Source: Macrostomum lignano (Eukaryota). From it: 64,000 nt of DNA. This document shows, one piece after another, positions 5,719 through 40,150 of the stretch. The stretch lies in contig NIVC01003503.1 of NCBI GenBank assembly GCA_002269645.1, positions 1 through 64,000 on the forward strand, in the 5' to 3' direction. A program made the translations under genes and the position numbers. Each line of letters begins with the position of its first letter. The stretch's first letter is position 1. The notes below the pieces were generated by a model that saw only the letters and a list, made by a program, of their open reading frames with translations, searched no databases and was not told where the DNA came from.

Positions 5719-7459
5719 CTAATATTTGCTTATCGTTAAATAGGCAAACAAGACTATTATAATAACAGCATCATTCAACGTCAGATACACGTACTTCTTC
5801 AGGGAGCTGCTTTTCTGAGCCTTGAATATCTTTGCGTTGTCCTTGCGATCACCCAACTGCTGAGCGCTCGATACTTTGGTCTTCTTCCTGCCAAAGGAGG
5901 CGATGTCGAAGATGAGCTCGAACAGCTCGCACAGGGTGAGCAGAGACATTCCCAGGTAGATGCCCATGATGCCGCCGACGTCCGAGATGAAGTCTGCAAA
6001 CCGTAGTCGATCGAGAAGTTCATCCGATCGCACAGAACTCGATGCGGCTTGAAGTGCACTTTGAGCATGTTGCTGCGGATGTATGAGGACACGATCGACT
6101 CGTTTCCGTTCACGACGAGGTCGAGAGCCGGAACACTCAGATTCTTAGACTTGGCCCTCATCCAAACAGGTTCGATGGAGCTGCTGACGAACGGCATCAT
6201 TGAGCTCTGAGTGGGCCAGTCGGAACTGGAGATGGTCGCGCTGTACTGCAGTGTGCTGCAAAGTCGCTTAGCTTTACATGCTTCTTTCGATATTCCGTCG
6301 AACTGAGTGGTGAGAGGTTCCAGAGATGGGTCGCTAAAAAATACCAAGAAGTTTGGATCACCTGTAAGGTTAAGTGCGAACTTCTTTCCACGCAGAGGCC
6401 ACGGAAGAGGACCGGCATCGCTTGACAGATTGACGAGCTGCTGCATCTGTCGGTGGAACTCGTAGTAGAAGCAGTACGAGTAGCTGTACGAGTGCTTGTA
6501 TGGAGTCTCGTCGTACGGGTTCACGAACTGAACGTCGGCGGGTCGCTCAGACAGTCGAACTGACCAGCCTTGTACACCTGCTGCGTCATGTCGATCTCGA
6601 CGGTGTGGGACTTTCCGGGTCCAAGCGAGAACGAGCTCACGAAATCGGACGGATACTCACCTGGAGGCGTGAGGAACACTTTCACACCTGCTTGTCTGTC
6701 GGGTCCGTTGTAGTCGGCGACATCGAGCGACCAGTCGGACACAGGAATGAGAGTTCGTCCTGCGTACACCATCTTGCGGATCGAGTGTCCGCTCGATGCG
6801 AGTCCTTGGAACGCCGAGTCCGTAACCAGGGTGACCACAATGCCGGATGATGAGCCGGTCTGTTCAATCTGTTGTTGCCACGTGCTGTTCAGAGTCCACT
6901 TGAGACAGCGCAAGTACATCGGATGGTAGAAGGTCTGCGCTTCGATGGGCGCATACTGGGCCATTCCAAATAGCTTAAACTTGAAGTCACTCGTGATGAT
7001 GCTCTGTTCGTTTCGGTGAGCCAGAGCATCAATCAACAGCTGATATGATATTGACTGAGGATAAGCACGGGATAGCCTCATTTCTTGGGGTGTAGTTTCT
7101 GTTAATCCGTTTATTTGCAATCCCCGCCGTAGGACGGTTTGAGAGCTATTGAGCTGATCGTTGATTGCAGCAGCCGATGCCTCATCAATAGTAGCAGAGT
7201 AGCTGCCAGAGATCGGGTTCTCGAAACAGGCGTACACATCCGGGAACTGGAAGTTGAGACTGTTTCCATCAAGCGAGCTGGTGACCTGCCGAGACTGCAG
7301 CTTGACAACGAATTGGTAGAATCCGTAAAAGAAGAGTCCCGACATCAGCAGCATCAGGATGAGCCAGAAAGCTCGCACAACCAACGGTTTGCTGCTCACT
7401 ACTCTGGGCAGTCCGTGCGCTGAGGTGGAAGACATGGCTTCCTTGATCGGCTGCAGCAT
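5719..7459 (-). pseudogene. DEG/ENaC channel subunit, copy 1 (two single-base frameshifts, at ~6535 and ~5995)
   Basis: ORFs 6521..7459, 5799..6524 and 5719..6033 tile one subunit: HG motif (STSAHGLPRV), TM1, FPDVYAC, TM2 DFISDVGGIMGIYLGMSLLT. Each break is the loss of one C from a CC relative to the intact copies. Confidence 0.9.
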
Positions 7460-8263
7460 AAATGTTTCTGGTTGCAGTTTCTGGGTTCCAGATTTAGTCT
7501 CGCATTTACTGCTCGTAGAGAAGTTTTAGGTCGACAAACTTATCAGCATGTATTTATACAACGATACTGTACTGCATTTCTAGATAGCAAGTCTGAGTGG
7601 CGATTCCCATTATTACGAGCGAAGATTTCTGAATCGCTTCTAGACTTGCTTTTCCACAATGGACTGTCAAGGGCTGCTTTATGTATTGGCCAGGTCTGGA
7701 TGCGTTTTCATTTTGTTAATTGATTAATTATATGTGGTCCCCTTCGTTTCGAGTATCTATGCCATTGTTAGCAGCTTGATTGTGCCCAGTCCGAAAGCAG
7801 TAGACTGCTTGAGTGGTTATAGGTACTTTGGATATTTTTGGCACAAAATACCACCCTAGTCCATTTCCGATGCCCTACAAATATAGTACTTTTACACTGG
7901 ATTGCTGTCCACTGAAATAAACTCAGCACAACATGTATTGTGCTTCAGACCCACTTTATATAATTAGTATTTGTGACCGCTCCGCCAACCGTCAATTATC
8001 AAATAAAGAGAGCAAAAATTATTCCAGAGAGACATATATGGTATTTCTACACAAACAATATATATTCTTGTATATATATGGAAGGCTAAGACTAATCTTA
8101 TCTCGTACTTGTCTACCAATAGAGAACAATTGTCAGATGCAGGTAGCCACTAAAATAATAATTGGCTGTCAACGCTAAACATTCGCACTCACATGTACGT
8201 GAACAGTAAAATTTACTCAAGAGTCAAAGCTTATTGCAGCAATGGATACGTTGCTGCTGATGT

Positions 8264-9928
8264 TTAATTATTCGGAAGATCTCTTGACGATTGATGATTA
8301 GTCAATGCTGGCACACCAATCTTGTTTGTTACTCCACTTGTGTTCGAAGGTCTCCATTTTTTTAAGCTGACTGAGACGATGTCGAAGATAAGCTCGAACA
8401 GCTCGCACAGGGTGAGCAGAGACATTCCCAGGGTAGATGCCCATGATGCCGCCGACGAGTCCGAGATGAAGTCCTGCAAACCGTAGTCGATCGAGAAGTT
8501 CATGCGATCGCACAGAACTCGATGCGGCTTGAAGTGCACTTTGAGCATGTTGCTGCGGATGTATGATGACACGATCGACTCGTTTCCGTTCACGACGAGG
8601 TCGAGAGCCGGAACACTCAGATTCTTAGAGTTGGCCCTCATCCAAACAGGTTCGATGGAGCTGCTGACGAACGGCATCATTGAGCTCTGAGTGGGCCAGT
8701 CGAACTGGAGATGGTCGCGCTGTACTGCAGTGTGCTGCAAGGCTTCTTGGTTTTACATTTAGCGTTTGTTACTTTAGCAAACTGCTCCATGTTATAATTT
8801 GCTTTGTAAAATATCAAAAAGTTTGGCTCGTCAGTAAAATTCGTGACGAACTTTTTTCCACGCAGCGGCCACGGAAGTGGTCCGACAGCGTTTGACAGAT
8901 TGACGAGCTGCTGCATCTGTCGGTGGAACTCGTAGTAGAAGCAGTACGAGTAGCTGTACGAGTGCTTGTACGGAGTCTCGTCGTACGGGTTCACGAACTG
9001 AACATCAGGCGGGTCGCTCAGACAGTCGAACTGACCAGCCTTGTACACCTGCTGCGTCATGTCGATCTCGACGGTGTGGGACTTTCCGGGTCCCAGCGAG
9101 AACGAGCTCACGAAGTCGGACGGATACTCACCTGGAGGCGTGAGGAACACTTTCACACCTGCCTGTCTGTCGGGTCCGTTGTAGTCGGCGACATTGAGCG
9201 ACCAGTCGGACACAGGAATGGGAGTTCGTCTTGCGTACACCATCTTGCGGATCGAGTGTCCGCTCGATGCGAGTCCTTGGAACGCCGAGTCCGTAACTAG
9301 GGTGACCACAATGCCGGATGATGAGCCGGTCTGTACGATCCTTTGTTGCCACGTGCTGTTCAGAGTCCACTTGAGACAGCGCAAGTACATCGGTGGTAGA
9401 AGGTCTGCGCTTCAGCGTCCTCGAAGTCAAGCATTCCGTAGTTGCTATTGAACTTTATGTCGCTTGAAATGACTGCCTGTTCGTGTCGGTGGGCCAGCGC
9501 GTCGATTAAAAGTTTGTAAGATATCGACTGTGGAAAGACACTTGTAAAGTATTTTTAAAATGTTTTGTTTCTCTGTCCAATTTTTTTAACTCGCGCGTTA
9601 GGGCAAAGTCGAAGCTGTTGAGCTGATGATTGATTGCAGCAGCCGATGCCTCATCCACAGTCGCAGAGTAGCTGCCAGAGATCGGGTTCTCGAAACAGGC
9701 GTACACATCCGGGAACTGGAAGTTGAGGCCATTTCCTTCAAGCGTGCTCGTTACCTGCCGAGACTGCAGCTTGACAGCGAATTGGTAGAATCCGTAAAGG
9801 AAGAGGCTCGACATCAGCAGCATCAGGGTGAGCCAGAAAGCTCGCACAGCCAGAGGTTTGCTGCTGACAATTCTCGAGAACCCATGGGCCGAAGTTGAGG
9901 CCATGGCCATCTTCAACTGTTGTTTCAT
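8264..9928 (-). pseudogene. DEG/ENaC subunit, copy 2 (divergent variable blocks, several indels)
   Basis: ORFs 9506..9991, 8677..9390 and 8264..8740. Same motifs as copy 1. Indels at ~9420, ~9390, ~8700, ~8458 and ~8432. Confidence 0.88.
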
Positions 9929-12699
9929 TTTGATTTGAGAATAACTCGTACAGTTTTTTTGCAATATGAGCTTGAGTTCCTTTCGGTTCATTTGTCGCTT
10001 TTAAATCGTCTCGCAACAGTATAGTGGGTGGTGTGCTGTTTGACGAACTAATGGCGTTTTGTTTGGCTATTTTTTGAGTGGGAAGTACACTGCTATCGCT
10101 TAAATAGTGCAACTGATCTATAAAGCGCTGGAAAAGACTTCTGAAATTGTATCTTGGGAAAATACGAGAATTATTTAAAATGACTATGGGGCTTTGGCTA
10201 TGGAAAAATTTAAAGGTAAGAATTAATCATTACAGCACATCAGTGACAGTGTTAAAGCTTTTATCAAGTTTCAGCTGCACGCTGATATGTCAATATTTGG
10301 TGAGCTTTTCGATTTAACGTATTATTGCTTTTCCGTTTGCTTGGCCAGCCGCTCTTAGCAAACTGTAGCTAATTGCTGCTGCCAAAAGTGACTTGTTATT
10401 TGAGTGTAAATTCCTGCATTGCTATCTATTAAAAGCTTCCCTCCATCGGACGCAACCAGCAACCAGGTAAAAAGCTTTTTATTTGACAGGCAGCACACAG
10501 CTTAAGCTGATGGAAAATTATTAGATTGGGGGAAACTGAGGGATGAGACAAGACGGGAGAGGGAAGATAAAAGAGGAGAGGAGATTAGAGAAAAAGAGCA
10601 CGCTTTTTCTATTGTAAAAGCAAACTCAACAACGGAATTAATAATCTTTGCGCACTCGTGTCTAGATCGTTGCTGCACTCAAAAGCCGTGCACCATGTCT
10701 CCACTGGTGAACGCCCGAAATGTTTGTATAGTCTAAAGCAGACAGTTTGAAGAGTTAGCAGTCACACCAAACGTGTGACTGTCAACAATTATGAATGAAA
10801 TTGATCTTGAAATAGATGGGCGCTTCGAAGTTTTGGCGGGGCGCTAAAAATCAATGACTATACTCACCGACTCTATAGGACCGCCGAAACTAAATAGCCA
10901 GAAGTAATAAAATACGACTTGTAAACTCACTACGGTCAACTTTACTAAACAATCGAAGATTTGTGCCTGGTTTTGTTTGGGCCACAAACGATTGCGTCGA
11001 CGGAAATTGTGAACTAAGTAAATTTTTGCGCGCCTTTCAGGCATCGAAACAGGAATACAACAGATTGCTTATCTGCGAATAGTCTATGGTCAAGCCGCCC
11101 TCCATCTTTGGATATTCCCAACGGTTATATTTGGATATACCCATTTGCAGATGAGCAATCTGTGTATTCCTGTATCAATGCGTTTGCAATGATATTTTTT
11201 ATTCGATACAACAAAGCTGAATAAACAGATTACGAAAACGGTAACACAGCCTGCAGCACAGCAGTATCCATTGCGGATACGTCAGCCGAAGAAATATCTT
11301 TAGACGTTACACTCACATCGGCCGAATTGCATGGTTTGTTCCGCATGGGATCCTCGGGGTAAGCCTCTTCTTCGCTTGGCAGTGGTGGCAGAGCATCATC
11401 GTTACCGCATTCAATGAATCGGATGAACTCCATCAACTCTTAGTCATCCGCCTCGTCACGTCCACCCATACTCAAGTCGCTGAGAAAGTTGACCTCATTT
11501 CCATTCAAGCCGTCAATGCTTTCAATCGGCAAATTCGACCAATTTATCATTCGTATGAGTGGCATGAATAGAGGTTAGGGCAAACAGGAGAAACAGGAAC
11601 ATGTATCCTCTGCTGCAGAGTTCCAGCTTATAAGACCACAACTTCATTTAACATGTTTCGTCTATGGTAATTTCAGACTGTTCCGCTTAACTTTTCGTTC
11701 CAGACGTTTATTCTATGGCCATCATTTGGCTTGCACCAAGTGGAAAATGCCTATGACACAAATCCCTAGAATCGCTTAGTGAACAATTCCCGTCTGGGAA
11801 GTTGTGTCCTAGCCGTTTTGAATTGGTTTTTTGGACGAAAATAGACACAATTCCACTATCGAGAGGTCACGCTTCACACACAACTGCCATAGCGTCGAGG
11901 CCGGTAGGTCTCCTCCTTGTCCTCGTGTTTTCTATGTAAGAAAGGTCAAATATAGCGTATAATCTTTGCCTGGTTCTGGCCATAGACATTGTGCAGCATT
12001 TGCAACAATTTGGCTTTATTGGTGTACCCCTAAAAACCCCATTCAAAATGATAGTCGTACAATGATCTACGAGTTTTTGCAATCAAAAAACTACTCAAGT
12101 ATCTGCGGTATCTACCGAGTTTAAAAAATATCGAAGTTAAATTCAATCGTGGTGTTGCTTCCTTTTACAGTAAATAATAGGAAACCCATTTCGGCCACAA
12201 TAGCATTATTTGCCGGAATTGTTAAATGTAGATTGTGTTGTGTTTTTAGTTATAGTGAAGTTCACGTAGACTCTCAGGTCTCGCTTAATATGTTTATACT
12301 CATGCGCGTTGACAACAGTGTTACGCAGTCAAACGAACGATACTCATAATTGAACGCACGATGCATATAAGGTAATTGAACAGCCATGTATACATTCTAG
12401 CCCCAAAGTTAGTCAGTTAGTTAAAACACTTGGACCCGATATGGACAGTTACTACAGATTGTGTATATGGTTGCTAGCCGGCTGGGATCCTTTTGCAGCA
12501 ACCGCATATGTCATGGTCATAAAATATAAAGGGAACCATAACAATCTACGAGATGCCCTTTTCCAGAAGTTATAGCAATACTAAGGTTCAGCCGCTACAC
12601 TGATTGCTGCAGGAAAAAGGGAAAATACGAGTACATGCTGACATTGCTCATAATATACGAACGTACACACACCTTTCTCAAACAGATGTCATAGCTGCT

Positions 12700-12835
12700 C
12701 GAAAGCCTGCGGTCCTCCTCTTCCATGGCTTGTCCTTCTTTAGCAGTTTGATGAGGGGCTCCGCAAGCCTGGAGAGGCTGGGAATGAAGTTGCCAATGTA
12801 CTTCACGAAACGAGCCACTTCCTTGGCTTCAGTAT
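12700..12835 (-). mobile_element. Short Gypsy pol fragment (RT-RNase H connection)
   Basis: Translates as EAKEVARFVKYIGNFIPSLSRLAEPLIKLLKKDKPW. Confidence 0.7.
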
Positions 12836-13205: not shown

Positions 13206-14925
13206 TCAAGGCTCGCTTGAGATGCTGCTGATGCTGAGGCTCTTTGTAGACTGTTTTGGCGGCGGCGCGTGACTCTTTTTTCTGACTCCCAACTGCTGGA
13301 TTGAAGAAGCTGCCGGCTTGGAGCTTGACGCTCTTGCTTTCTTCCTGCCAAAGGAGGCGATGTCGAAGATAAGCTCAAACAGCTCGCACAGGGTGAGCAG
13401 AGACATTCCCAGGTAGATGCCCATGATGCCGCCGACGTCCGAGATGAAGTCCTGCAAACCGTAGTCGATCGAGAAGTTCATCCGATCGCACAGAACTCGA
13501 TGCGGCTTGAAGTGTACTTTGAGCATGTTGCTGCGGATGTATGAGGACACGATCGACTCGTTTCCGTTCACGACGAGGTCGAGAGCCGGAACACTCAGAT
13601 TCTTAGACTTGGCCTTCATCCAAACAGGCTTGATGGAGCTGCTGACGAACGGCATCATTGAGCTCTGAGTGGGCCAGTCGGAACTGGAGATGGTCGCGCT
13701 GTACTGCAGTGTGCTGCAAAGTCGTTTAGCTTTACATGTCTCTTTCGATTTTACGTCGATCTGACTGGTGAGAGGTTCCAGAGATGGGTCGCTAAAAAAT
13801 ACCAAGAAGTTTGGATCACCTGTAAGGTTAAGTGCGAACTTCTTTCCACGCAGAGGCCACGGAAGAGGACCGGCATCGCTTGACAGATTGACGAGCTGCT
13901 GCATCTGTCGGTGGAACTCGTAGTAGAAGCAGTACGAGTAGCTGTACGAGTGCTTGTATGGAGTCTCGTCATACGGGTTCACGAACTGAACGTCCGGCGG
14001 GTCGCTCAGACAGTCGAACTGACCAGCCTTGTACACCTGCTGCGTCATGTGGCATGTGACCACGTCAGGTGTGGGACTTTCCGGGTCCCAGCGAGAAAGA
14101 GCTCACGAAATCGGACGGATACTCACCTGAAGGCGTGAGGAACACTTTCACACCTGCCTGTCTGTCGGGTCCGTTGTAGTCGGCGACATTGAGCGACCAG
14201 TCGGACACAGGAATGGGAGTTCGTCTTGCGTACACCATCTTTTGGATCGAGTGTCCGCTTGATGCGAGTCCTTGGAACGACGAGTCCGTAACCAGGGTGA
14301 CCACAATACCGGATGATGAGCCGGTCTGTACGATCTTTTGTTGCCACGTGCTGTTCAGAGTCCACCTGAGACAGCGCAAGTACATCGGATGGTAGAAGGT
14401 CTGCGCTTTGATGGACACATATTCGGCCATTCCGTAACCTGTTTTAAACTTGAAGTCACTCGTGATGATGCTCTGTTCGTTTCGGTGAGCCAGAGCATCA
14501 ATCAACAGCTGATATGATATTGACTGAGGATAGGAACGTGAGAGCGTCATCTCTTGGGGTGTAGCGTCCATTGATCCGTTTCTTTGAAGTTTTCGCCGTA
14601 GGAGTGTTTGAGAGCCAATGAGCTGAGCGTTGATTGCAGCAGCCGATGCCTCATCAATAGTAGCAGAGTAGCTGCCAGAGATCGGGTTCTCGAAACAGGC
14701 GTACACATCCGGGAACTGGAAGTTGAGACTGTTTCCATCAAGCGAGCTGGTGACCTGCCGAGACTGCAGCTTGACAACGAATTGGTAGAATCCGTAAAAG
14801 AAGAGTCCCGACATCAGCAGCATCAGGATGAGCCAGAAAGCTCGCACAATCAGCGGTTTGCTGCTCACTACTCTGGGTAGTCCGTGTACTGATGTTGAAG
14901 CCATGGCTTTCTTGACTTGCTGCAT
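13206..14925 (-). pseudogene. DEG/ENaC subunit, copy 3 (one disrupted patch at ~14050-14070)
   Basis: ORFs 14065..14925 and 13206..14063 abut. Sequence gtggcatgtgaccacgtcag replaces gtcgatctcgac of the intact copies. Confidence 0.9.
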
Positions 14926-15763: not shown

Positions 15764-16080
15764 TTATAAGTGCAGCACACTAGAGCTCTGAAGAAGAATG
15801 CAGCAAGTACTGGATGCCACAGCATCTTCCGAAACAGACCGACTGTCACGGGTTGGAAGCAAGACGCTGTACGAGCGTATATGCGATTGGAAACAGGTGG
15901 TGGAAACAGGTTGAACTTCCAGTTTTCCTGTAAGCTTTTTGTTATGAGAACCCGATCTCTGGTAGCTACTCTGCGACTGTGGATGAGGCATCAGCCGCTG
16001 CAATCAATGCTCAGCTCAGTGGCTCGCAAGTTGTAATGAGGCGAGGGCTTTCAATGCTTGGGTACGTCAGTGTTACGTTT
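15764..16080 (+). pseudogene. Inverted, degenerate 5' fragment of an ENaC copy (copy-6 type)
   Basis: The + strand reads ...LNFQF...ENPISGSYSATVDEASAAAINAQLSGSQVVMRRGLSMLGYV, matching copy 6 (AQLNDSQVVMRRELSMLGYV) in the opposite orientation to the array. Confidence 0.85.
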
Positions 16081-18433: not shown

Positions 18434-20086
18434 CTATTCTGTGCACTGATTATCGCTACTTTGTTCTTGCAGATCACCTAGCTGCTGAGCGCTCGATACT
18501 TTGGTCTTTTTCCTGCCAAAGGAGGCGATGTCGAAGATGAGTTCGAACAGCACGCACAGGGTGAGCAGAGACATTCCCAGGTAGATGCCCATGATGCCGC
18601 CGACGTCCGAGATGAAGTCCTGCAAACCGTAGTCAATGGAGAAGTTCATCCGATCGCACAGAACTCGATGCGGCTTGAAGTGCACTTTGAGCATGTTGCT
18701 GCGGATGTATGAGGACACGATCGACTCGTTTCCGTTCACGACGAGGTCGAGAGCCGGAACACTCAGATTCTTAGACTTGGCCCTCATCCAAACAGGTTGG
18801 ATTGAGCTGCTGACGAACGGCATCATTGAGCTCTGAGTGGGCCAGTCGGAACTGGAGATGGTCGCGCTATACTGCAGTGTGCTGCAAAGTCGTTTAGCTT
18901 TACATGCCTTTTTCGATTTTACGTCGATCTGACTGATGAGAGGTTCCAGAGATGGGTCGCTAAAAAATACCAAGAAGTTTGGATCACCTGTAAGGTTGAG
19001 TGCGAACTTCTTTCCACGCAGAGGCCACGGAAGAGGACCGGCATCGCTTGACAGATTGACGAGCTGCTGCATCTGTCGGTGGAACTCGTAGTAGAAGCAG
19101 TACGAGTAGCTGTACGAGTGCTTGTATGGAGTCTCGTCGTACGGGTTCACGAACTGAACGTCCGGCGGGTCGCTCAGACAGTCGAACTGACCAGCCTTGT
19201 ACACCTGCTGCGTCATGTCGATCTCGACGGTGTGGGACTTTCCGGGTCCAAGCGAGAACGAGCTCACGAAGTCGGATGGATACTCACCTGGAGGCGTGAG
19301 GAACACTTTCACACCTGCCTGTCTGTCGGGTCCGTTGTAGTCGGCGACATTGAGCGACCAGTTGGACACAGGAATGGGAGTTCGTCTTGCGTACACCATC
19401 TTGCGGATCGAGTGTCCGCTCGATGCGAGTCCTTGAAACGACGAGTCCGTAACCAGGGTGACCACAATGCCGGATGATGAGCCGGTCTGTTCAATCTGTT
19501 GTTGCCACGTGCTGTTCAGAGTCCACTTGAGACAGCGCAAGTACATCGGATGGTAGAAGGTCTGCGCTTTGATGGACACATATTCGGCCATTCCGTAACC
19601 TGTTTTAAACTTGAAGTCACTCGTGATGATGCTCTGTTCGTTTCGGTGAGCCAGAGCATCAATCAACAGCTGATATGATATTGACTGAGGATAGGAACGT
19701 GAGAGCGTCATCTCTTGGGGTGTAGCGTCCATTGATCCGTTTCTTTGAAGTTTTCGCCGTAGGAGTGTTTGAGAGCCAATGAGCTGAGCGTTGATTGCAG
19801 CAGCCGATGCCTCATCAATAGTAGCAGAGTAGCTGCCAGAGATCGGGTTCTCGAAACAGGTGTACACATCCGGGAACTGGAAGTTGAGGCTGTTTCCATC
19901 AAGCGAGCTGGTGACCTGCCGAGACTGCAGCTTGACAACGAATTGGTAGAATCCGTAAAAGAAGAGTCCCGACATCAGCAGCATCAGGATGAGCCAGAAA
20001 GCTCGCACAATCAGCGGTTTGCTGCTCACTACTCTGGGTAGTCCGTGCACTGATGTTGAAGCCATGGCTTTCTTGACTTGCTGCAT
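18434..20086 (-). CDS. DEG/ENaC channel subunit, copy 4 (intact, 550 aa, single exon)
   Basis: Uninterrupted ORF with the N-terminal HG motif, two TM helices, FPDVYTC and the TM2 GMS (GxS) filter. Confidence 0.95.
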   Translation of the reverse strand: MQQVKKAMASTSVHGLPRVVSSKPLIVRAFWLILMLLMSGLFFYGFYQFVVKLQSRQVTSSLDGNSLNFQFPDVYTCFENPISGSYSATIDEASAAAINAQLIGSQTLLRRKLQRNGSMDATPQEMTLSRSYPQSISYQLLIDALAHRNEQSIITSDFKFKTGYGMAEYVSIKAQTFYHPMYLRCLKWTLNSTWQQQIEQTGSSSGIVVTLVTDSSFQGLASSGHSIRKMVYARRTPIPVSNWSLNVADYNGPDRQAGVKVFLTPPGEYPSDFVSSFSLGPGKSHTVEIDMTQQVYKAGQFDCLSDPPDVQFVNPYDETPYKHSYSYSYCFYYEFHRQMQQLVNLSSDAGPLPWPLRGKKFALNLTGDPNFLVFFSDPSLEPLISQIDVKSKKACKAKRLCSTLQYSATISSSDWPTQSSMMPFVSSSIQPVWMRAKSKNLSVPALDLVVNGNESIVSSYIRSNMLKVHFKPHRVLCDRMNFSIDYGLQDFISDVGGIMGIYLGMSLLTLCVLFELIFDIASFGRKKTKVSSAQQLGDLQEQSSDNQCTE

Positions 20087-21400: not shown

Positions 21401-22184
21401 GGAAGAAGGTTCTAGAAACCGCGAGAACATTCTTGAAAACCGAATAGAACAATAGTGCATTGCAGATCAGGTAGCTTTAGACAGAAATTTTGGAGTTCAG
21501 CTATATCAATTATGAACAAGCGGAGTCTTTTAGCAGTCTTGTAAATCAAAGCCGGCAAATTTGAAGTCAAGGCACAAAGCAAGTTAAAAGTAGATAGAAC
21601 ACTTTACCCGGTTTTTCTTCAGGACAGCCGTGGGTTCTCTTGACGCCATGTCGCTTGTCTCAATTCATCAGTGGACAAGGCCGCAGTCTCTCCTTCTACT
21701 CTTACGTCGTAGTTGATCATGCACGGCTCAGTGAAAGTTTAAACGGTTGAAAGGGCCTGTCAAATTAAGCTCATAGAGTGGAGTCCAAGTAACCTTCCGG
21801 TATGTACACGAATGATACTTCATGCTGCTTGCAGTGACACCAGGAAGCTGGATTTGGCAAAAAAATTTACAAAAATTGGACCTGGAATTGGACAGAACAA
21901 GCAAAGGGACAATTTAGAACTATTATGTAAGCTTCAGCTCGCAAGGTGGAGTCCCTAATTATTCCCTTGATTGTTCTCTCCTATCCCACGTCCAATTTTT
22001 GCTGATTTTATCACAAGGCGTAATAAGCTTCCATTCATGCGTACGACAATCAACCACTCCTCGGATTATTCCATCATGGCACGCAGGCTTCTGATGCTTG
22101 AACTCATTCTCCTGGCTGACCTCAGCTGCTGACTGTTTGAGGTCGCAGGTTAAGGCCTTGCTGTAACTATACTAGGCTACATCA

Positions 22185-22262
22185 AAAATGAGCTAGAACA
22201 GCTCGCACAGGGTTAGATGAGATTTCCATGATGCCGCCGACGTCCGAGATGAATTCCTGCAC
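22185..22262 (-). pseudogene. Short degenerate ENaC TM2 fragment
   Basis: gatgccgccgacgtccgagatgaa and acagctcgcacaggg match the TM2 coding sequence of the array copies. Confidence 0.75.
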
Positions 22263-22779: not shown

Positions 22780-24492
22780 TCAAGGCACGCTTGAGATGCT
22801 GCTGATGCTGAGGCTCTTAGTAGACTCTTTCGGCGGCAAGTGACTCTCTTCGCTGACTTTGAACTGCTGGATTGTAGAAACAGATGCCTGCTTGGAGCTT
22901 GACGCTCTTGCTTTCTTCCTGCCAAATAAGGCGATGTCGAAGATGAGCTCGAACAGCTCGCACAGGGTGAGCAGAGACATTCCCAGGTAGATGCCCATGA
23001 TGCCGCCGACGTCCGAGATGAAGTCCTGCAAACCGTAGTCCATCGAGAAGTTCATCCGATCGCACAGAACTCGATGCGGCTTGAAGTGCACTTTGAGCAT
23101 GTTGCTGCGGATGTATGAGGACACGATCGACTCGTTTCCGTTCACGACGAGGTCGAGAGCCGGAACACTCAGATTCTTAGACTTGGCCCTCATCCAAACA
23201 GGTTCGATGGAGCTGCTGACGAACGGCATCATTGAGCTCTGAGTGGGCCAGTCGGAACTGGAGATGGTCGCGCTGTACTGCAGTGTGCTGCAAAGTCGTT
23301 TAGCTTTACATGTCTCTTTCGATTTTACGTCGATCTGACTGGTGAGAGGTTCCAGAGATGGGTCGCTAAAAAATACCAAGAAGTTTGGATCACCTGTAAG
23401 GTTAAGTGCGAACTTCTTTCCACGCAGAGGCCACGGAAGAGGACCGGCATCGCTTGACAGATTGACGAGCTGCTGCATCTGTCGGTGGAACTCGTAGTAG
23501 AAGCAGTACGAGTAGCTGTACGAGTGCTTGTATGGAGTCTCGTCGTACGGGTTCACGAACTGAACGTCCGGCGGGTCGCTCAGACAGTCGAACTGACCAG
23601 CCTTGTACACCTGCTGCGTCATGTCGATCTCGACGGTGTGGGACTTTCCGGGTCCAAGCGAGAACGAGCTCACGAAGTCGGATGGATACTCACCTGGAGG
23701 CGTGAGGAACACTTTCACACCTGCTTGTCTGTCGGGTCCGTTGTAGTCGGCGACATTGAGCGACCAGTCGGACACAGGAATGGGAGTTCGTCTTGCGTAC
23801 ACCATCTTTTGGATCGAGTGTCCGCTCGATGCGAGTCCTTGAAACGACGAGTCCGTAACCAAGGTGACCACAATGCCGGATGATGAGCCGGTCTGTACGA
23901 TCTTTTGTTGCCACGTGCTGTACAGAGTCCACTTGAGACAGCGCAAGTACATCGGATGGTAGAAGGTCTGCGCTTTGATGGACACATATTCGGCCATTCC
24001 GTAACCTGTTTTAAACTTGAAGTCACTCGTGATGATGCTCTGTTCGTTTCGGTGAGCAAGCGCATCAATCAACAGCTGATATGATATTGACTGAGGATAG
24101 GCACGGGATAGTCTCATTTCTTGGGGTGTAGTTTCTGTTAATCCGTTTATTTGCAATCCCCGCCGTAGGACAGTCTGAGAGCTATTGAGCTGATCGTTGA
24201 TTGCAGCAGCCGATGCCTCATCAATAGTAGCAGAGTAGCTGCCAGAGATCGGGTTCTCGAAACAGGTGTACACATCCGGGAACTGGAAGTTGAGACTGTT
24301 TCCATCGACTGAGCTGGTGACCTGCCGAGACTGCAGCTTGACAACGAATCGGTAGAAACCATAGAAGAAAAGCCCCGACATCAGCAGCATCATTGTAAAC
24401 CAGAAAGCTCGCACAACCAGTGGTTTGCTGCTCACTACTCTGGGCAGTCCGTGCACTGATGTTGAAGCCATGGCTTCCTTAAATTGCTGCAT
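22780..24492 (-). CDS. DEG/ENaC channel subunit, copy 5 (intact, 570 aa, single exon)
   Basis: Uninterrupted ORF with all DEG/ENaC hallmark motifs. Confidence 0.95.
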   Translation of the reverse strand: MQQFKEAMASTSVHGLPRVVSSKPLVVRAFWFTMMLLMSGLFFYGFYRFVVKLQSRQVTSSVDGNSLNFQFPDVYTCFENPISGSYSATIDEASAAAINDQLNSSQTVLRRGLQINGLTETTPQEMRLSRAYPQSISYQLLIDALAHRNEQSIITSDFKFKTGYGMAEYVSIKAQTFYHPMYLRCLKWTLYSTWQQKIVQTGSSSGIVVTLVTDSSFQGLASSGHSIQKMVYARRTPIPVSDWSLNVADYNGPDRQAGVKVFLTPPGEYPSDFVSSFSLGPGKSHTVEIDMTQQVYKAGQFDCLSDPPDVQFVNPYDETPYKHSYSYSYCFYYEFHRQMQQLVNLSSDAGPLPWPLRGKKFALNLTGDPNFLVFFSDPSLEPLTSQIDVKSKETCKAKRLCSTLQYSATISSSDWPTQSSMMPFVSSSIEPVWMRAKSKNLSVPALDLVVNGNESIVSSYIRSNMLKVHFKPHRVLCDRMNFSMDYGLQDFISDVGGIMGIYLGMSLLTLCELFELIFDIALFGRKKARASSSKQASVSTIQQFKVSEESHLPPKESTKSLSISSISSVP

Positions 24493-25073
24493 GCTTGTTT
24501 CTTCGTGGTTTTAATTGTTTGATGCGAAGCATTCTCTCTTCCCGGGAATTACTGCTATTTATGAACCGTTTTTACTCTGAGTCTTCTGTTCCTTTTTTGC
24601 CACTCCTCCTCCACTCACATGAAAATCAATACTTCCTGGAATTTGAGTTTCGCTTCAGCAAGTACTTCAATTTCTGCAGCTGTGGGAAAGCTCAGTATTC
24701 TGAATTAATTAAGCATCGCAGTACGAGAAATTTCACTAATATTATCAGGCTTATGGATCTGCCAACTCTAGCATATTATAGCGAGTCTCGGCTGTTAGGA
24801 CGTAGGCAATCAGCCGTGTGCTTGCATTCGTGCGCATAAAGATTTGCAACGGTAATCTATAATATAGCAGTTGCAGAGAATTCTGCAAACCCTACAGCTG
24901 AGGGATGTTAGTTTTGGTTTATGTTTCTTTAGTGAGGCAATACTCTTGTAAAAATATTAGATGTGTGCTAGCTTTCGTCAAGACTGCTTTCCCAATAGTC
25001 TTGAGTAAATAACGAAGACCATATTGAATTAACTATCCACCTGCAGCGCTGGCGGGTATGACGAGGCAGTCAT

Positions 25074-25322
25074 TAAGGTGTCGTCTCTATTGCCACCTAG
25101 TCACTGGAGCCAAGATGAAGTTCTGATTCTGGCTCAGATGTTAGCGCTGCATGAGTACAGACACAGACGGCCTTTGAATCATTGAGCATCCGCTGTGTGG
25201 CTTGAGAAATCACCTGTGTGTTAAATCAAATCCGTTACTTTTCGATGGACGCGTTGCTTCATGAATGGACAGCCACGAGGACTCATTGACTGCTGCGAGC
25301 ATGTCACCAACGCGACACCTTA
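25074..25322. mobile_element. Possible ~250-bp MITE
   Basis: 10-bp inverted termini taaggtgtcg (25074) and cgacacctta (25313-25322), each ending in TA. Confidence 0.35.
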
Positions 25323-26416
25323 TAACATTCGTCTAAGTGACCTGGTGCATCCTGCAACGGCATCTGCGCTTGACGGTACAGATTGAGCGTTCTGCAAGCT
25401 GGCTCGACAGGGACGCCACCGCATGCATGCGCTCTGCGTTTTACCGGCTTCCTGCTAATGTGCCCTGGCGCTGTGACGCTGTTTCTTTATCCCCAGCGTA
25501 CTGCCGGCTGCGTCTGTTTTTTAACTGAAACTGCTGTTTAGAGGCTTCTTGCCTTAATCTACCATGGATACATGTAAGGATGTCCGTGTCTACTAATAAA
25601 ACATGCGTAACCTCTTGTACTGAGAGTTGATTCTCTTGTACTTCGTACATAGATACTAATAATATGATGTAACCACGCTCTGGTCGTGAGATCGTGAGGG
25701 AACTTTTTTGAAGCATGCCCGGTCTCTGTGCACCTACTGGGCAGAGCTGTCGAGACTGGGCCGGGTCCCTGACCAGGCTGACTGACTCCCGCTCTGCTAC
25801 GCCCCTGCTGTCTCTGTTCCGTCTCTCACTCAGCCACACTTGCCTTTCCGGAGCCCTACGTGCCCCTCGCCCGCCTCCCCTCTTCTCATGCGCCCCTCCC
25901 TTTTCTCATGTACTTCTCATGTTTTTCTCACATTTTCTCCTCCTGTTTCAGCATGTTTTTCTTGCGCTGTCCCCTTCTCATCCCGTGCTTACTTACAGTA
26001 TTGCTTGTGCTCAACGTCGCCCCATTCCCTTTTAGAATCCCAAACGGTGACGCAAGGCTTCTGACCCCTCCTTAGCCCCGATGACTCAGCACCCCTCTTG
26101 CGCAACCTTTTCTCATGCTATTGTTCTCTTCTCAAGATTTCTCATGCGATACCCACCCCACCTCCGCTTCTATTGTTCTCGTTTTTGATTCTTTTGTTCT
26201 CGTTTTCGTACTCAATTAGCACTTTTTCTCCAATGTTTACTTTTCTATTGTTCTCAGTTCTTCCCAATTATCCCCGATTTCCATTTCCTTTTTTCAGCCT
26301 GAGTCCCATTGTTCTCAATGTTTGCTTGCGCAACAATTCTTCGACCCCCCACTGTGCTCATTATCCCCCACCCTGCTCATTATCATGTTGCTATGCCTTT
26401 CTCATGCTTCTCATCA

Positions 26417-26507
26417 TGACTCATTCTGACGTCATTTTCCCGGCAGCCAATCAGAGAGAGGGAGTCATGGAAACGACCTTGGAGCGGCGGCCGTGAGGAC
26501 TATTTAA
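26417..26507 (+). promoter_or_regulatory. Compact Pol II promoter: AP-1, CRE, CCAAT and TATA-like motifs
   Basis: TGACTCA 26417-26423, TGACGTCA 26427-26434, CCAAT 26447-26451, TATTTAA 26501-26507. Downstream are a donor-like ccg|gtaagt at 26797 and AATAAA at 27764. Confidence 0.5.
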
Positions 26508-27987
26508 GGAAGTGATTCTCGGCGTGAGAATCCTCAGAAGGCTTTACCCATTTTTCTCGTCTCCGAAGTGGTCCTTCTTTGGACTTGCTGTCAGACATTG
26601 ATCTGACCCTCACCATTCGTCTATAGGACGAACCTCTGCCGGCCCGCGGTCTGACATCGCCCAGCATCCTCAGCACCGCCTGAGCTACATCAGCGCCTCG
26701 TCGCTTCGGCGCATCGCCGCTTCGCTACCTGCCTATCCGCAGCCTACAGCCGCCCTCGGTCACTCCTTTGCTCTCTTTCTCTCTGTGCAGCCGCCGGTAA
26801 GTTCCTATTACTAATTTGTGCTCTAATTGCCTTTGCTTATCCGGGGTTTGCTTCTTTGCCATTGCTTGATTAGAGAGCTGAGCCAATTGTGATACCGTAT
26901 TATTTGCTGTATTTATTCAATATAGTGAAGCCGCCCAATTGCCTGTGTATTTCGCCTGCGGGCCTTATTATTAACCATTACTAAACCCATCATTTTTCAC
27001 ATCATTTCATTCAAGGCTTGCTAGCCTTACTCCTTGGGTGGAAAAGCATAGGGAAGTTTTGGTAAGCTAATGGCCTCTCCCCGTGCAAAGCGCGCCTGTG
27101 TGTTCGTGCCGCGGGTCCGTGTGTGCGTGCAGTAGAGGGAAGTACGAAGTAGTGGGTCATGGCACAGAATGGCAGCAGGAAGGTTGCAACACCCTGCTTA
27201 CGTGTCCCTTTGCCCTGAGCAATCTAAACTATAGCTAGCACATGTTCAACTCATACTACTCTTAGTAATCGTAGCCGCAAGTCCACCTCAATCACAGCTA
27301 CAAAAGACCTCCTGCTGAGAAATCCTCCAGAGTGATCCCAGAGTTCCTAATTGAGCCCAAAGCAGAGTCTGAAAAGTCGGCTGCATGCGTCCCTCCTGTT
27401 AGCCTAAATCCCCTGGTAACCAATCCAGGCGGGGCTCTAGCCTCGAAAGGTCTGGTCAAGATCCAGGTGCGCCAGGTCATATAGAGTGGTGGCAGCCACT
27501 CGGTCATACCATGGCCGAGTGACCAATTTACGCACCCTGGCTACAGGCGGAGTCCATGTGGGTCCTTGGCCCTCTGGTCACGAAAGCGCTACCAAAGCTA
27601 TCAATCATGTGGGCGGGACAGTCTGGTGCTGGAGGTCCGTCAGGCCATTGCCAGGTCATCGGCAGCCTACGGTCATAGCCCCCCTATGGTCAGTTGCTCT
27701 CCTCCCCGCTGAGCAGACGGTCATAAAGGGCGGTTACATGATGGTTCAAACAACATTGTTGTGAATAAAAACATTGAGAAATTCGAAAAAACGGTACGCA
27801 AAGACAGCCATCAAAACGAAAAGTTTATTACAGAAATAAATATTAAGTCCTGTTAACTTTTTTATCTTGCTTACGTGGCATTCGAGAAATGACCATATAG
27901 CTATTCTACTAGAAAACACGTTAGTTTGTTAAGCTGTCGTTGGATATTTCAACGCTTAGCCAGAATCTCAACAGGAAAATGAACAAT

Positions 27988-29706
27988 TCAAGGCACGCTT
28001 GAGATGCTGCTGATGCTGAGGCTCTTAGTAGACTCTTTCGGCGGCAAGTGACTCTCTTCGCTGACTTTGAACTGCTGGATTGTAGAAACAGATGCCTGCT
28101 TGGAGCTTGATGCTCTTGCTTTCTTCCTGCCAAATAAGGCGATGTCGAAGATGAGCTCAAACAGCTCGCACAGGGTGAGCAGAGACATTCCCAGGTAGAT
28201 GCCCATGATGCCGCCGACGTCCGAGATGAAGTCCTGCAAACCGTAGTCGATCGAGAAGTTCATGCGATCGCACAGAACTCGATGCGGCTTGAAGTGTACT
28301 TTGAGCATGTTGCTGCGGATGTATGATGACACGATCGACTCGTTTCCGTTCACGACGAGGTCGAGAGCCGGAACACTCAGATTCTTAGAGTTGGCCCTCA
28401 TCCAAACAGGCTTGATGGAGCTGCTGACGAACGGCATCATTGAGCTCTGAGTGGGCCAGTCGGAACTGGAGATGGTCGCGCTGTACTGCAGAGTGGTGCA
28501 AGGTCGCTTAGCTTTGCACACAGCCTTTGTATTCTGGTCGATTTTTCCACTTTTGATTTGAAGCGATGGATCACGAAAGTAGATAAAGAAGTTTGGGTCA
28601 TCAGTAAGATTCATTACAAACTTCTTCCCACGAAGAGGCCAAGGAAGCGGTCCAATTATACCTGACATGTTGACGAGTTCTTGGTTCTGTCGGTGGAACT
28701 CGTAGTAGAAGCAGTACGAGTAACTGTACGAGTGCCGGTATGGAGTCTCGTCGTACGGGTTCACGAACTGAACGTCCGGCGGGTCGCTCAGACAGTCGAA
28801 CTGACCAGCCTTGTACACCTGCTGCGTCATGTCGATCTCGACGGTGTGGAATTTTCCGGGTCCCAGCGAGAACGAGCTCACGAAATCGGACGGATACTCA
28901 CCTGGAGGCGTGAGGAACACTTTCACACCTGCTTGTCTGTCGGGTCCGTTGTAGTCGGCGACATTGAGCGACCAGTCGGACACAGGAATGGGAGTTCGTC
29001 TTGCGTACACCATCTTTTGGATCGAGTGTCCGCTCGATGCGAGTCCTTGGAACGCCGAGTCCGTAACCAGGGTGACCACAATGCCGGATGATGAGCCGGT
29101 CTGTACGATCTTTTGTTGCCACGTGCTGTTCAGAGTCCACTTGAGACAGCGCAAGTACATCGGATGGTAGAAGATCTGCGCTTCGAGGGGCGCATATTCG
29201 GGCATTCCGTAGTCGGTGTTATAAGCGACATCGCTTGTGATGATATTCTGTTCGTTTCGGTGAGCCAGAGCGTCTATCAAGATTCTATAAGATATAGACT
29301 GAGGATGGGCAAGCGAGAACAACATCTCTGCTCCCATAAATGCGTTGCCGACGTACCCAAGCATTGAAAGCTCTCGTCTCATTACAACTTGCGAATCATT
29401 GAGCTGAGCATTGATTGCAGCAGCCGATGCCTCATCCACAGTCGCAGAGTAGCTTCCGGAGATCGGGTTCTCGTAGCAAGCGTACACATCCGGGAACTGG
29501 AAGTTGAGGCTGTTTCCATCGACCGAGCTGGTCACCTGACGAGTCTGCAGCTTGACAACGAAGTCGTAGAATCCTTTGAAGAATAGACCCGTCATTAGCA
29601 GCAGCACAGAGAGCCAAGCCAGTCGCACAGTGAGTGGTTTGCCACTTACAATCCTTGGCAGTCCGTGCGCTGTTGTGGACGTCATAGCATCAACGATTTG
29701 AAGCAT
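27988..29706 (-). CDS. DEG/ENaC channel subunit, copy 6 (intact, 572 aa, most divergent N-terminus)
   Basis: Uninterrupted ORF: STTAHGLPRIV, TM1, FPDVYACYEN, TM2 DVGGIMGIYLGMS. Confidence 0.95.
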   Translation of the reverse strand: MLQIVDAMTSTTAHGLPRIVSGKPLTVRLAWLSVLLLMTGLFFKGFYDFVVKLQTRQVTSSVDGNSLNFQFPDVYACYENPISGSYSATVDEASAAAINAQLNDSQVVMRRELSMLGYVGNAFMGAEMLFSLAHPQSISYRILIDALAHRNEQNIITSDVAYNTDYGMPEYAPLEAQIFYHPMYLRCLKWTLNSTWQQKIVQTGSSSGIVVTLVTDSAFQGLASSGHSIQKMVYARRTPIPVSDWSLNVADYNGPDRQAGVKVFLTPPGEYPSDFVSSFSLGPGKFHTVEIDMTQQVYKAGQFDCLSDPPDVQFVNPYDETPYRHSYSYSYCFYYEFHRQNQELVNMSGIIGPLPWPLRGKKFVMNLTDDPNFFIYFRDPSLQIKSGKIDQNTKAVCKAKRPCTTLQYSATISSSDWPTQSSMMPFVSSSIKPVWMRANSKNLSVPALDLVVNGNESIVSSYIRSNMLKVHFKPHRVLCDRMNFSIDYGLQDFISDVGGIMGIYLGMSLLTLCELFELIFDIALFGRKKARASSSKQASVSTIQQFKVSEESHLPPKESTKSLSISSISSVP

Positions 29707-40120: not shown

Positions 40121-40150
40121 AATAGGGGTTATTGCTCTCACTGAAATTTT

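What the first reader, a model, noticed from the sequence alone, without database searches (positions are those of the whole stretch)
5719..29706. Six-gene DEG/ENaC array built as a combinatorial mosaic of interchangeable blocks
Seen in sequence: after ASAAAIN, the finger-region block is type A (DQLNSSQTVLRRGLQINGLTETT) in copies 1 and 5, type B (AQLIGSQTLLRRKLQRNGSMDAT) in copies 3 and 4, and unique in copies 2 and 6. Downstream markers assort independently: QQQIEQ, HSIRK and the KKTKVSSAQQLGD tail in copies 1 and 4; QQKIVQ, HSIQK and the KKARASSSK...SISSISS tail in copies 3, 5 and 6. All four combinations A-x, B-x, A-y and B-y occur. Copy 5 also switches from copy-1 type to copy-3/4 type inside the finger region (KTGYGMAEYVSIK). 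A second variable block lies in the thumb (e.g. SLEPLTSQIDVKSKETC, KANYNMEQFAKVTNAKC, SLQIKSGKIDQNTKAVC). Palm and TM2 blocks are almost identical in all six copies. Established: finger and thumb domains are the ligand and stimulus-sensing parts of DEG/ENaC trimers. Inference: a sensory receptor repertoire diversified by segmental gene conversion or unequal crossover, further multiplied by heterotrimer assembly.
Basis: partly seen in the sequence, partly recalled or inferred. Interest (0 to 1): 0.78.

Follow-up and report, generated by a model that had tools for sequence, protein, structure and literature searches.

The report
Mosaic flatworm DEG/ENaC channel gene cluster
A Macrostomum-type flatworm carries six tandem copies of a divergent sodium-channel (DEG/ENaC) gene, three intact and three broken, that have repeatedly copied pieces into one another; this is a clear but ordinary case of gene conversion in a gene cluster.

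Summary
Six intronless, same-strand DEG/ENaC (Pfam ASC) copies lie at 5719-29706, and every quoted marker and all four A/B x x/y combinations are present. Copies 1, 2 and 3 carry frameshifts or stops, and two further relic fragments exist.

The mosaic is statistically robust. The PHI permutation test gives p=0.0002. Shared-run tests reach p<=0.0012 for all pairs of the four close copies. At least 8 recombination events are needed, and segment trees conflict at 95-100% bootstrap.

Silent-site divergence shows that the main process is homogenisation. For copy 5 against copy 6, 4% of four-fold sites differ in the palm/TM2 core and 51% in the finger/thumb blocks (p=7e-11). Flanking DNA is unrelated, and the core is GC3-rich.

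The copies are therefore old paralogues. Non-allelic gene conversion keeps their conserved core alike, while old, divergent finger and thumb segments persist and are occasionally swapped.

dN/dS is below 1 in almost every comparison, so I found no sign of positive selection. Sensory function and heterotrimer combinatorics remain untested. An assembly artefact cannot be excluded without reads.

This is a new member of a known kind, of moderate interest.

The parts
5719..7459 (-). Copy 1. DEG/ENaC probable pseudogene: type A finger, unique beta3-beta4 block, QQQIEQ/HSIRK, KKTKV tail.
   Evidence: The reading frame is split over three frames. 1-bp deletions lie at about 6536 and about 5994. Both remove one G of a GG pair, so they need confirmation at read level.
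8264..9991 (-). Copy 2. DEG/ENaC pseudogene with a unique finger, thumb and tail.
   Evidence: 1-bp deletions at about 9589, 9393 and 8702; a +2 insertion at 8458-8459; a +1 insertion at 8433; a TAA at about 9557. The core blocks are still 93-100% identical to the other copies.
13206..14925 (-). Copy 3. DEG/ENaC pseudogene: type B finger, QQKIVQ/HSIQK, KKARASSSK tail.
   Evidence: A 7-bp insertion, TGACGTG, at 14061-14067 carries an in-frame TGA, followed by clustered substitutions. The ORF is split into 286 and 285 aa.
18434..20086 (-). Copy 4. Intact 550-aa DEG/ENaC gene: type B finger, QQQIEQ/HSIRK, KKTKV tail.
   Evidence: Open frame. Pfam ASC E=7.6e-43. Nearly identical to copy 3 (96.6% over the whole 1,791-bp match) from about 200 bp upstream of the ATG to alignment column 705, then copy-1-like. 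Carries Val at the nearly invariant TM2 Glu.
22780..24492 (-). Copy 5. Intact 570-aa DEG/ENaC gene: type A finger, copy-3/4-type beta3-beta4 block, copy-3-type thumb, copy-6-type tail and 3' flank.
   Evidence: Open frame. Pfam ASC E=1.2e-43. At least four switches of nearest relative along the gene.
27988..29706 (-). Copy 6. Intact 572-aa DEG/ENaC gene, the most divergent in the N-terminus, finger and thumb; the tail is 99-100% identical to copy 5 (1 synonymous difference).
   Evidence: Open frame. Pfam ASC E=1.1e-41. dS against the other copies is above 2 in the thumb and 0.05-0.14 in the core.
24096..24194 (-). Finger variable block 1, coordinates given for copy 5. Equivalents: 7060-7158, 9533-9627, 14529-14627, 19690-19788, 29304-29408.
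   Evidence: 46-77% identity between types and 97-100% within types. Maps to alpha1-loop-alpha2 of the AlphaFold model.
23971..24050 (-). Variable block 2, the beta3-beta4 hairpin, coordinates given for copy 5. Equivalents: 6938-7014, 9408-9487, 14404-14483, 19565-19644, 29179-29258.
   Evidence: Copies 3, 4 and 5 are identical; copies 1, 2 and 6 are each distinct.
23278..23477 (-). Thumb variable block, coordinates given for copy 5. Equivalents: 6246-6445, 8725-8915, 13704-13903, 18872-19071, 28486-28685.
   Evidence: Lies just upstream of the conserved C..C..Y..WP motif that aligns with FaNaC and ASIC. Corresponds to the loop plus helix 380-396 of the model.
22931..23970 (-). Homogenised core of copy 5: palm/beta-ball 23478-23970 and palm/knuckle/TM2 22931-23277, interrupted by the thumb block.
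   Evidence: 93-100% DNA identity in almost every window among all six copies. Four-fold sites differ at 4%, against 51% in the variable blocks. GC3 is 0.73-0.82.
15898..16068 (+). Inverted relic fragment of a copy-6-type beta2/finger segment, lying between copies 3 and 4.
   Evidence: blastn 85-91% to copy 6 on the opposite strand. Alignment. tblastn.
22097..22262 (-). Degenerate relic of a TM2 plus C-tail segment, the remnant of a seventh copy, downstream of copy 5.
   Evidence: blastn 73-75% to the TM2 region of every copy. tblastn to residues 488-545.

Best explanation
This is an old tandem cluster of a lineage-specific, intronless DEG/ENaC channel gene in a Macrostomum lignano-type flatworm genome. 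It evolves by birth-and-death together with non-allelic homologous recombination.

Mechanism proposed:
- Short-tract interlocus gene conversion, possibly with an occasional unequal crossover, starts in the stretches that purifying selection keeps similar: the palm, beta-ball, knuckle and TM2.
- That conversion keeps those stretches nearly identical in all copies, pseudogenes included.
- The less constrained finger (alpha1-alpha2), beta3-beta4 hairpin, thumb (loop plus alpha5), N-terminus and C-tail diverged far enough to escape routine conversion. They persist as old sequence types.
- When a conversion tract or crossover spans one of these blocks, the whole block moves to another copy. This produced the A/B x x/y combinations and the multi-switch structure of copy 5.

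Shown: the mosaic, its statistical significance, the heterogeneity of silent-site divergence, the unrelated flanks, the pseudogene status, and the domain positions.

Inferred: the order and direction of events, that divergence by itself blocks conversion, and any functional consequence.
For: Family and fold:
- Pfam ASC over its full length.
- A profile matches FaNaC, ASIC and ENaC structures over their full length, E=2.6e-111 to 1e-72.
- The AlphaFold model (pLDDT 80.5) matches FaNaC and ASIC with Foldseek probability 1.0.

Mosaic:
- The sliding identity table.
- 36% of informative site pairs are incompatible, and PHI p=0.0002 in three of four taxon sets (p=0.0064 in the fourth).
- Shared-run tests give p<=0.0012 for all six pairs of copies 1, 3, 4 and 5, and p=0.0002 for copies 5 and 6.
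- Rm >= 8.
- Conflicting clades have 95-100% bootstrap support in different segments.

Conversion, not selection alone:
- dS of copy 6 against the others is above 2 in the thumb and 1.25 to saturated in the finger, but 0.05-0.14 in the core.
- Four-fold sites between copies 5 and 6 differ at 5/126 in the core and 20/39 in the variable blocks, Fisher p=7e-11.
- Frameshifted copy 2 keeps the same near-identity in the core.
- Homology between copies stops within about 70-270 bp of the coding sequence, and the 0.8-3.5 kb spacers are unalignable.
- GC3 is 0.73-0.82 in the core against 0.42-0.53 in the variable blocks, as GC-biased conversion would give.

Independent hint of ongoing exchange: UniRef A0A1I8GD92 from M. 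lignano combines a copy-6 N-terminus and finger (1 difference in 270 aa), a copy-3-type thumb (0 differences) and the copy-5/6 tail (0 differences). That is a seventh combination.
Against: - No raw reads or second assembly of this locus could be examined, so chimaeric assembly or cross-polishing between paralogues is not excluded.
- High GC3 in the core could instead reflect codon usage.
- Extremely strong constraint on silent sites in the core cannot be formally excluded, but it would not explain the pseudogene or the flanks.
- The single outside protein (P0001) comes from an older assembly and could itself be chimaeric.
- Some mosaics, for example copy 4 as a copy-3 5' half joined to a copy-1-like 3' half, fit a single unequal crossover as well as they fit conversion.
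Confidence: 0.8

Rival explanations
1. Adaptive combinatorial repertoire. Selection favours and maintains different finger and thumb ligand-sensing modules. Gene conversion is the means by which new combinations arise. Pseudogenes serve as donors, and heterotrimer assembly multiplies the diversity.
For: - The variable blocks coincide with the finger and thumb of the model. From established knowledge of ASIC and FaNaC structures, these regions bind ligands and toxins.
- Pseudogene copy 1 shares its finger block with intact copy 5 and its tail with intact copy 4.
- All four block combinations occur.
- A further combination occurs in P0001.
Against: - dN/dS is 0.1-0.9 in the finger and thumb blocks, with saturated dS, so the blocks are old and not fast-evolving.
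- Three of the six copies are dead.
- There are no expression or ligand data.
- Three other M. lignano DEG/ENaCs near the FaNaC branch gave no currents with the peptides tested (PMC9234716).
- Persistence of divergent blocks is also expected neutrally, because conversion needs homology.
Confidence: 0.2
2. Assembly artefact. The mosaic copies are chimaeras made by collapsing haplotypes or homeologous copies of a partly polyploid genome, or by polishing with reads mapped to the wrong paralogue.
For: - The source appears to be M. lignano or a close relative. From my own knowledge, its genome is repeat-rich with hidden polyploidy.
- The frameshifts in copy 1 are single-base deletions in GG pairs, which could be sequencing errors.
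Against: - The longest exact identity between any two copies is 339 bp, much shorter than long reads. Each 1.7-kb gene is also bounded by unique spacers.
- The switched blocks are 25-50% divergent over 100-200 bp, so reads map to them unambiguously.
- Frameshifts are confined to copies 1-3: eight in 5.2 kb against none in 5.1 kb of copies 4-6. Random error would not give this.
- The heterogeneity of dS between copy 6 and the others does not depend on any chimaera.
Confidence: 0.07
3. No recombination. The genes are recent tandem duplicates, and the variable blocks simply evolved very fast, or convergently, under relaxed or positive selection, while the core is held by purifying selection.
For: The core is the part of the protein that is conserved across the whole family.
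Against: - Silent four-fold sites show the same contrast of more than ten-fold.
- The pseudogene copy keeps the conserved core.
- The flanks are unalignable although the core is 93-100% identical.
- Runs of adjacent sites support mutually incompatible groupings.
- dN/dS is below 1 in the variable blocks.
Confidence: 0.03

Closest known systems
Lineage-specific intronless ENaC clusters of the spider mite Tetranychus urticae (PMC5203786)
   Same: - Highly divergent DEG/ENaC genes, mostly intronless.
- Tandem clusters mixed with near-full-length pseudogenes and transposon insertions.
- Birth-and-death dynamics.
- In that paper, gene conversion is discussed as a possible source of diversity for clustered chemoreceptor genes in general (vertebrate olfactory receptors, C. 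elegans receptors and the mite's gustatory receptors).
   Different: - A different phylum and an unrelated clade.
- The exchange between copies is demonstrated here, segment by segment.
- The cluster here is small: six copies and two relics.
Concerted or mosaic evolution by interlocus gene conversion in tandem receptor and immune gene families, such as MHC, KIR, opsins and olfactory receptors (textbook knowledge)
   Same: - Conserved segments are homogenised and segment trees are incongruent.
- Silent-site divergence varies along the gene.
- Converted parts are GC-rich.
- Pseudogenes take part in the exchange.
- Divergent binding segments persist.
   Different: - I found no report of this for DEG/ENaC channels in the searched literature.
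- Unlike MHC, there is no evidence here of balancing or positive selection.
FMRFamide-gated sodium channels (FaNaC; PDB 7YVB, 8ON7)
   Same: - The best-scoring solved relatives by profile (E=2.6e-111) and by fold.
- The same topology, HG motif and G-x-S filter.
   Different: - Only about 16% identity.
- The extracellular domain is cysteine-poor: seven Cys, and no thumb disulfide ladder.
- M. lignano relatives tested by others did not respond to FMRFamide-type peptides.
- Peptide gating is untested for these genes.

Membership tests
DEG/ENaC (Pfam ASC, PF00858) channel subunit | Full-length match to the family profile above the curated cut-off | tested here: met
   144-150 bits against a cut-off of 23.6, covering profile positions 3-455 of 455, for copies 4-6.
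DEG/ENaC (Pfam ASC, PF00858) channel subunit | Two transmembrane helices flanking a large extracellular domain with the palm/finger/thumb/knuckle fold | tested here: met
   AlphaFold model, pLDDT 80.5, with helices 25-54 and 488-534. Foldseek probability 1.00 to FaNaC, ASIC and ENaC chains, TM-score 0.5-0.6.
DEG/ENaC (Pfam ASC, PF00858) channel subunit | N-terminal HG motif, post-TM1 FPxxxxC motif and G-x-S selectivity filter in TM2 | tested here: met
   Read directly from the translations: H14-G15, FQFPDVYTC, and G504-M505-S506 within GGIMGIYLGMS.
DEG/ENaC (Pfam ASC, PF00858) channel subunit | Conserved extracellular cysteine framework, including the thumb disulfides | tested here: not met
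   There are only seven extracellular Cys (77, 185, 303, 330, 395, 401, 477). The thumb region has no internal Cys pairs. This marks a divergent subfamily, not exclusion from the family.
DEG/ENaC (Pfam ASC, PF00858) channel subunit | Forms trimeric, amiloride-sensitive Na+-permeable channels | not testable with these tools
   Needs heterologous expression and electrophysiology.
FaNaC (peptide-gated) subfamily | Groups inside the FaNaC clade and is gated by FMRFamide-type peptides | not tested
   FaNaC is only the best solved relative. No phylogeny was run. Published M. lignano relatives gave no response.
Interlocus gene conversion / concerted evolution in a tandem array | Significant phylogenetic incongruence between adjacent segments | tested here: met
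   PHI p=0.0002. Shared runs p<=0.0012. Conflicting clades at 95-100% bootstrap. Rm >= 8.
Interlocus gene conversion / concerted evolution in a tandem array | Silent-site divergence much lower in the homogenised tracts than in the rest of the same genes and in the flanks | tested here: met
   Four-fold sites differ at 4% against 51%, p=7e-11. dS is 0.05-0.14 against more than 2. The flanks are unalignable.
Interlocus gene conversion / concerted evolution in a tandem array | Paralogues within a species are more alike in the converted tracts than orthologues between species | not testable with these tools
   No orthologous array from another species or strain could be retrieved.
Interlocus gene conversion / concerted evolution in a tandem array | The mosaic copies are real molecules and not an assembly artefact | not testable with these tools
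   No reads were available.

The most novel reading that the evidence does not exclude
The divergent finger and thumb segments are ligand-specificity modules kept distinct by selection. Pseudogenes and relic fragments act as a reservoir of donor modules. Conversion then continually produces new, individually variable channel subunits in Macrostomum: a germline 'cassette' system for an ion-channel receptor family. P0001 would be one segregating or homeologous product of it.
Probability: 0.15. Interest if true: 0.6.

Novelty: new member of a known kind. Interest (0 to 1): 0.35.

Why it matters
This is a clean, quantifiable example of mosaic concerted evolution in a channel family for which I found no such report.

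It warns that trees and dN/dS scans of expanded invertebrate DEG/ENaC families can be misleading unless recombination is handled. A core that looks recent can hide old paralogues.

If the intact copies are expressed and differ in ligand response, the natural block swaps (A/B finger, alternative thumbs) are ready-made chimaeras. They could be used to map which segment sets specificity.

Without functional data, it remains an ordinary case of gene-family dynamics.

Tried and rejected
- Exact-sequence look-ups of the three intact proteins and of P0001 in public assemblies found nothing. No second copy of the locus, no transcript contig and no genomic context for P0001 could be obtained.
- Two word-indexed homology searches returned only two Macrostomum proteins. 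The exhaustive HMMER scan was needed to reach 1045 distant relatives.
- AlphaFold with the five-sequence alignment failed (pLDDT 29). It worked only with the 34-sequence alignment.
- My first shared-run test on all six copies is inflated, because sites private to copies 2 and 6 cluster in the variable blocks. I repeated it on the four close copies and on copies 3, 5 and 6.
- Rm = 38 for all six copies is inflated by multiple hits in saturated blocks. Only the value for the four close copies (8) is used.
- Positive selection was looked for with Nei-Gojobori dN/dS per segment and not found. The test is crude, and dS is saturated in the variable blocks.
- Retroposition as the origin of the intronless copies was considered. 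It is not favoured, given the same-strand tandem order and the short shared 5' and 3' flanks.
- Literature searches for gene conversion in ENaC or pickpocket families found nothing specific.


Full report
**What is there**

Between 5719 and 29706 the minus strand carries six copies of an intronless gene of about 1.7 kb, all in the same orientation. They are separated by spacers of 0.8-3.5 kb.

The three copies with open frames are copy 4 (18434-20086, 550 aa), copy 5 (22780-24492, 570 aa) and copy 6 (27988-29706, 572 aa). Each matches the Pfam ASC (DEG/ENaC) model end to end, with E about 1e-42.

A profile built with distant relatives matches solved FaNaC, ASIC and ENaC chains over their full length. 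FaNaC 7YVB is best at E=2.6e-111. An AlphaFold model of copy 5 has pLDDT 80.5 and pTM 0.75. Foldseek matches it to FaNaC and ASIC structures with probability 1.00.

The HG motif, the post-TM1 FPxxxxC motif and the G-M-S filter in TM2 are all present.

The closest database protein is UniRef A0A1I8GD92 of Macrostomum lignano, 95% identical to copy 6. The next is a 38%-identical M. lignano paralogue. The window therefore comes from this flatworm or a very close relative. Outside Macrostomum the nearest relatives score only about 1e-58, so the clade is divergent and lineage-restricted.

**Three of the six copies are disabled**

- Copy 1 has two 1-bp deletions, at about 6536 and about 5994.
- Copy 2 has three 1-bp deletions, a 2-bp and a 1-bp insertion, and a TAA codon.
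- Copy 3 has a 7-bp insertion carrying a TGA at 14061-14067, followed by clustered substitutions.

All eight frameshifting lesions lie in copies 1-3. None lies in the 5.1 kb of copies 4-6, which argues against random sequencing error. The two GG-to-G deletions of copy 1 still need confirmation from reads.

Two relic fragments also exist. One is an inverted copy-6-type beta2/finger piece at 15898-16068. The other is a degenerate TM2/C-tail piece at 22097-22262. tblastn finds no other family fragments elsewhere in the window.

**The observation**

A 75-bp sliding comparison shows how sharp the mosaic is:

| Pair | Segment | DNA identity |
|---|---|---|
| Copies 5 and 6 | Finger | 46-75% |
| Copies 5 and 6 | Thumb | 52-72% |
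| Copies 5 and 6 | Core | 96-100% (87% in one window) |
| Copies 5 and 6 | C-tail and 3' flank | 96-100% |
| Copies 1 and 5 | First finger block | 97% |
| Copies 3 and 4 | 5' flank to column 705 | about 100% |

After column 705, copy 4 follows copy 1.

On the model, the first variable block (residues about 100-135) covers the C-terminal half of alpha1, the loop and alpha2 of the finger. The second block (about 153-175, KTGYGMAEYVSIK) is the beta3-beta4 hairpin beside the finger, not the finger helices. The thumb block (about 344-396) is the loop plus helix alpha5, just before the conserved C..C..Y..WP motif that aligns with FaNaC and ASIC.

Among the six copies, TM2, the palm strands and the knuckle vary at 3-9% of positions. 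Alpha2 and alpha5 vary at 71-82%.

**Is it more than chance?**

- Of 117 informative sites, 36% of pairs are incompatible. Incompatibility is strongly clustered by distance. PHI gives z=-5.1 for all six copies and z=-8.7 for copies 1, 3, 4 and 5, with permutation p=0.0002.
- A GENECONV-style longest-shared-run test restricted to the four close copies is significant for all six pairs (p<=0.0012). It is also significant for copies 5 and 6 (p=0.0002).
- The four-gamete test needs at least 8 exchanges among the four close copies.
- Neighbour-joining trees per segment give mutually exclusive clades with high bootstrap support:

| Segment | Clade | Bootstrap |
|---|---|---|
| Finger block 1 | c1+c5 | 100% |
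| Finger block 1 | c3+c4 | 100% |
| Block 2 | c3+c4+c5 | 99% |
| Columns 701-800 | c1+c4 | 96% |
| Thumb | c3+c5 | 95% |
| Tail | c5+c6 | 100% |
| Tail | c1+c4 | 100% |

**What process?**

The decisive evidence is at silent sites.

- Nei-Gojobori dS between copy 6 and the others is above 2 in the thumb block and 1.25 to saturated in finger block 1. It is about 0.6 in the N-terminus and only 0.05-0.14 in the two core blocks.
- At four-fold degenerate sites, copies 5 and 6 differ at 5 of 126 positions in the core and 20 of 39 in the variable blocks (Fisher p=7e-11). All pairs involving copy 2 or copy 6 behave the same way.
- Frameshifted copy 2 keeps the same near-identical core, so protein-level selection cannot be the cause.
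- Homology between copies ends within about 70-270 bp of the coding sequence. The spacers are unalignable, as expected if the duplications are old.
- GC3 is 0.73-0.82 in the core and 0.42-0.53 in the variable blocks. This is the pattern GC-biased conversion produces.

Together these results describe old paralogues whose conserved core is repeatedly homogenised by non-allelic gene conversion. Old, divergent segments survive, and the four closer copies have exchanged them several times.

Copy 5 changes its nearest relative at least four times along the gene, which calls for several short tracts and not one crossover. Copy 4 (the 5' half of copy 3 joined to a copy-1-like 3' half) could be the product of an unequal crossover.

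Recombination needs homology, so breakpoints can only fall in the conserved stretches. That alone makes the variable segments behave as 'interchangeable blocks'.

**What is not supported**

- dN/dS is below 1 in every finger, thumb and core comparison: 0.1-0.6 in the finger blocks and up to 0.9 on very few changes in the thumb. It exceeds 1 (1.24) in only one C-tail pair. The blocks are old, and they are not visibly under diversifying selection.
- No expression, ligand or assembly information could be obtained.
- The only functional data on M. lignano DEG/ENaCs that I found report no response of three related channels to FMRFamide-type and other peptides (PMC9234716).

'Sensory repertoire' and 'heterotrimer multiplication' therefore remain speculation.

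**Artefact?**

Reads were not available. Several points argue against chimaeric assembly:

- The longest exact identity between two copies is 339 bp.
- Each copy is bracketed by unique spacers.
- The exchanged blocks are 25-50% divergent.
- The contrast in dS does not depend on any junction.

An independently annotated M. lignano protein, A0A1I8GD92, shows yet another combination. It has the copy-6 N-terminus and finger (1 difference in 270 residues), a copy-3-type thumb (0 differences over residues 331-450) and the copy-5/6 tail (0 differences). It may be an allele, a homeologous copy or an older assembly's chimaera. If real, it shows that exchange of the thumb block is recent.

**Comparison and novelty**

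Intronless, clustered, highly divergent ENaC genes interspersed with near-full-length pseudogenes and transposons are known from the spider mite. In that paper, gene conversion was discussed as a possible source of diversity for clustered chemoreceptor genes in general (PMC5203786).

Mosaic concerted evolution is textbook for MHC, KIR, opsin and olfactory receptor clusters. I found no paper documenting it for DEG/ENaC genes.

This is a new, well-resolved member of a known kind of gene-family dynamics, not a new mechanism. Interest is moderate, at 0.35.

Noticed in passing
18434-20086 (copy 4), codon equivalent to Glu512 of copy 5, alignment column about 1723: Intact copy 4 has Val (GTG) where all other copies, and at least 90% of 34 distant family members, have a TM2 glutamate (LCELFEL becomes LCVLFEL). 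Its channel properties may be altered or impaired.
   Followed up: partly
Copies 4-6, extracellular domain (residues 55-487): There are only seven extracellular cysteines, and the thumb lacks the disulfide ladder typical of ASIC and ENaC. This is a cysteine-poor DEG/ENaC subfamily.
   Followed up: partly
6500-6850, 8923-9300, 19079-19477, 23485-23883, 28681-29091 (+ strand): Each copy carries an ORF of 116-136 aa antisense to the homogenised palm block. It is probably a by-product of GC3-rich codons.
   Followed up: no
3967-4823 (+): Two overlapping ORFs match the piggyBac-type transposase (PF13843) and are split by a frameshift. This is a decayed transposon just beside copy 1.
   Followed up: partly
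31067-31486, 32376-33129, 33428-33692, 34073-34658: Four minisatellites lie directly upstream of copy 6: 45 bp x 9.4, 20 bp x 37.6, 25 bp x 10.6 and 21 bp x 28.
   Followed up: no
281-955, 49945-52308, 52613-53710: Transposable-element ORFs: a retroviral-type aspartyl protease, a LINE endonuclease plus reverse transcriptase, and an apparently intact 365-aa mariner/Tc1-type transposase.
   Followed up: partly
45447-46526 (+) and 55940-57196 (-): Two apparently cellular ORFs: an RCC1-repeat protein, and a protein with a 2OG-Fe(II) oxygenase (AlkB-like) domain.
   Followed up: partly
38000-42000: A very AT-rich stretch (GC 0.24-0.30) in a window that is otherwise 0.34-0.59 GC.
   Followed up: no
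P0001 (UniRef A0A1I8GD92): The closest public protein is a DEG/ENaC channel, but its UniRef cluster is named 'Acid phosphatase'. This looks like a naming error. None of the window's own proteins is in the protein collections searched.
   Followed up: partly
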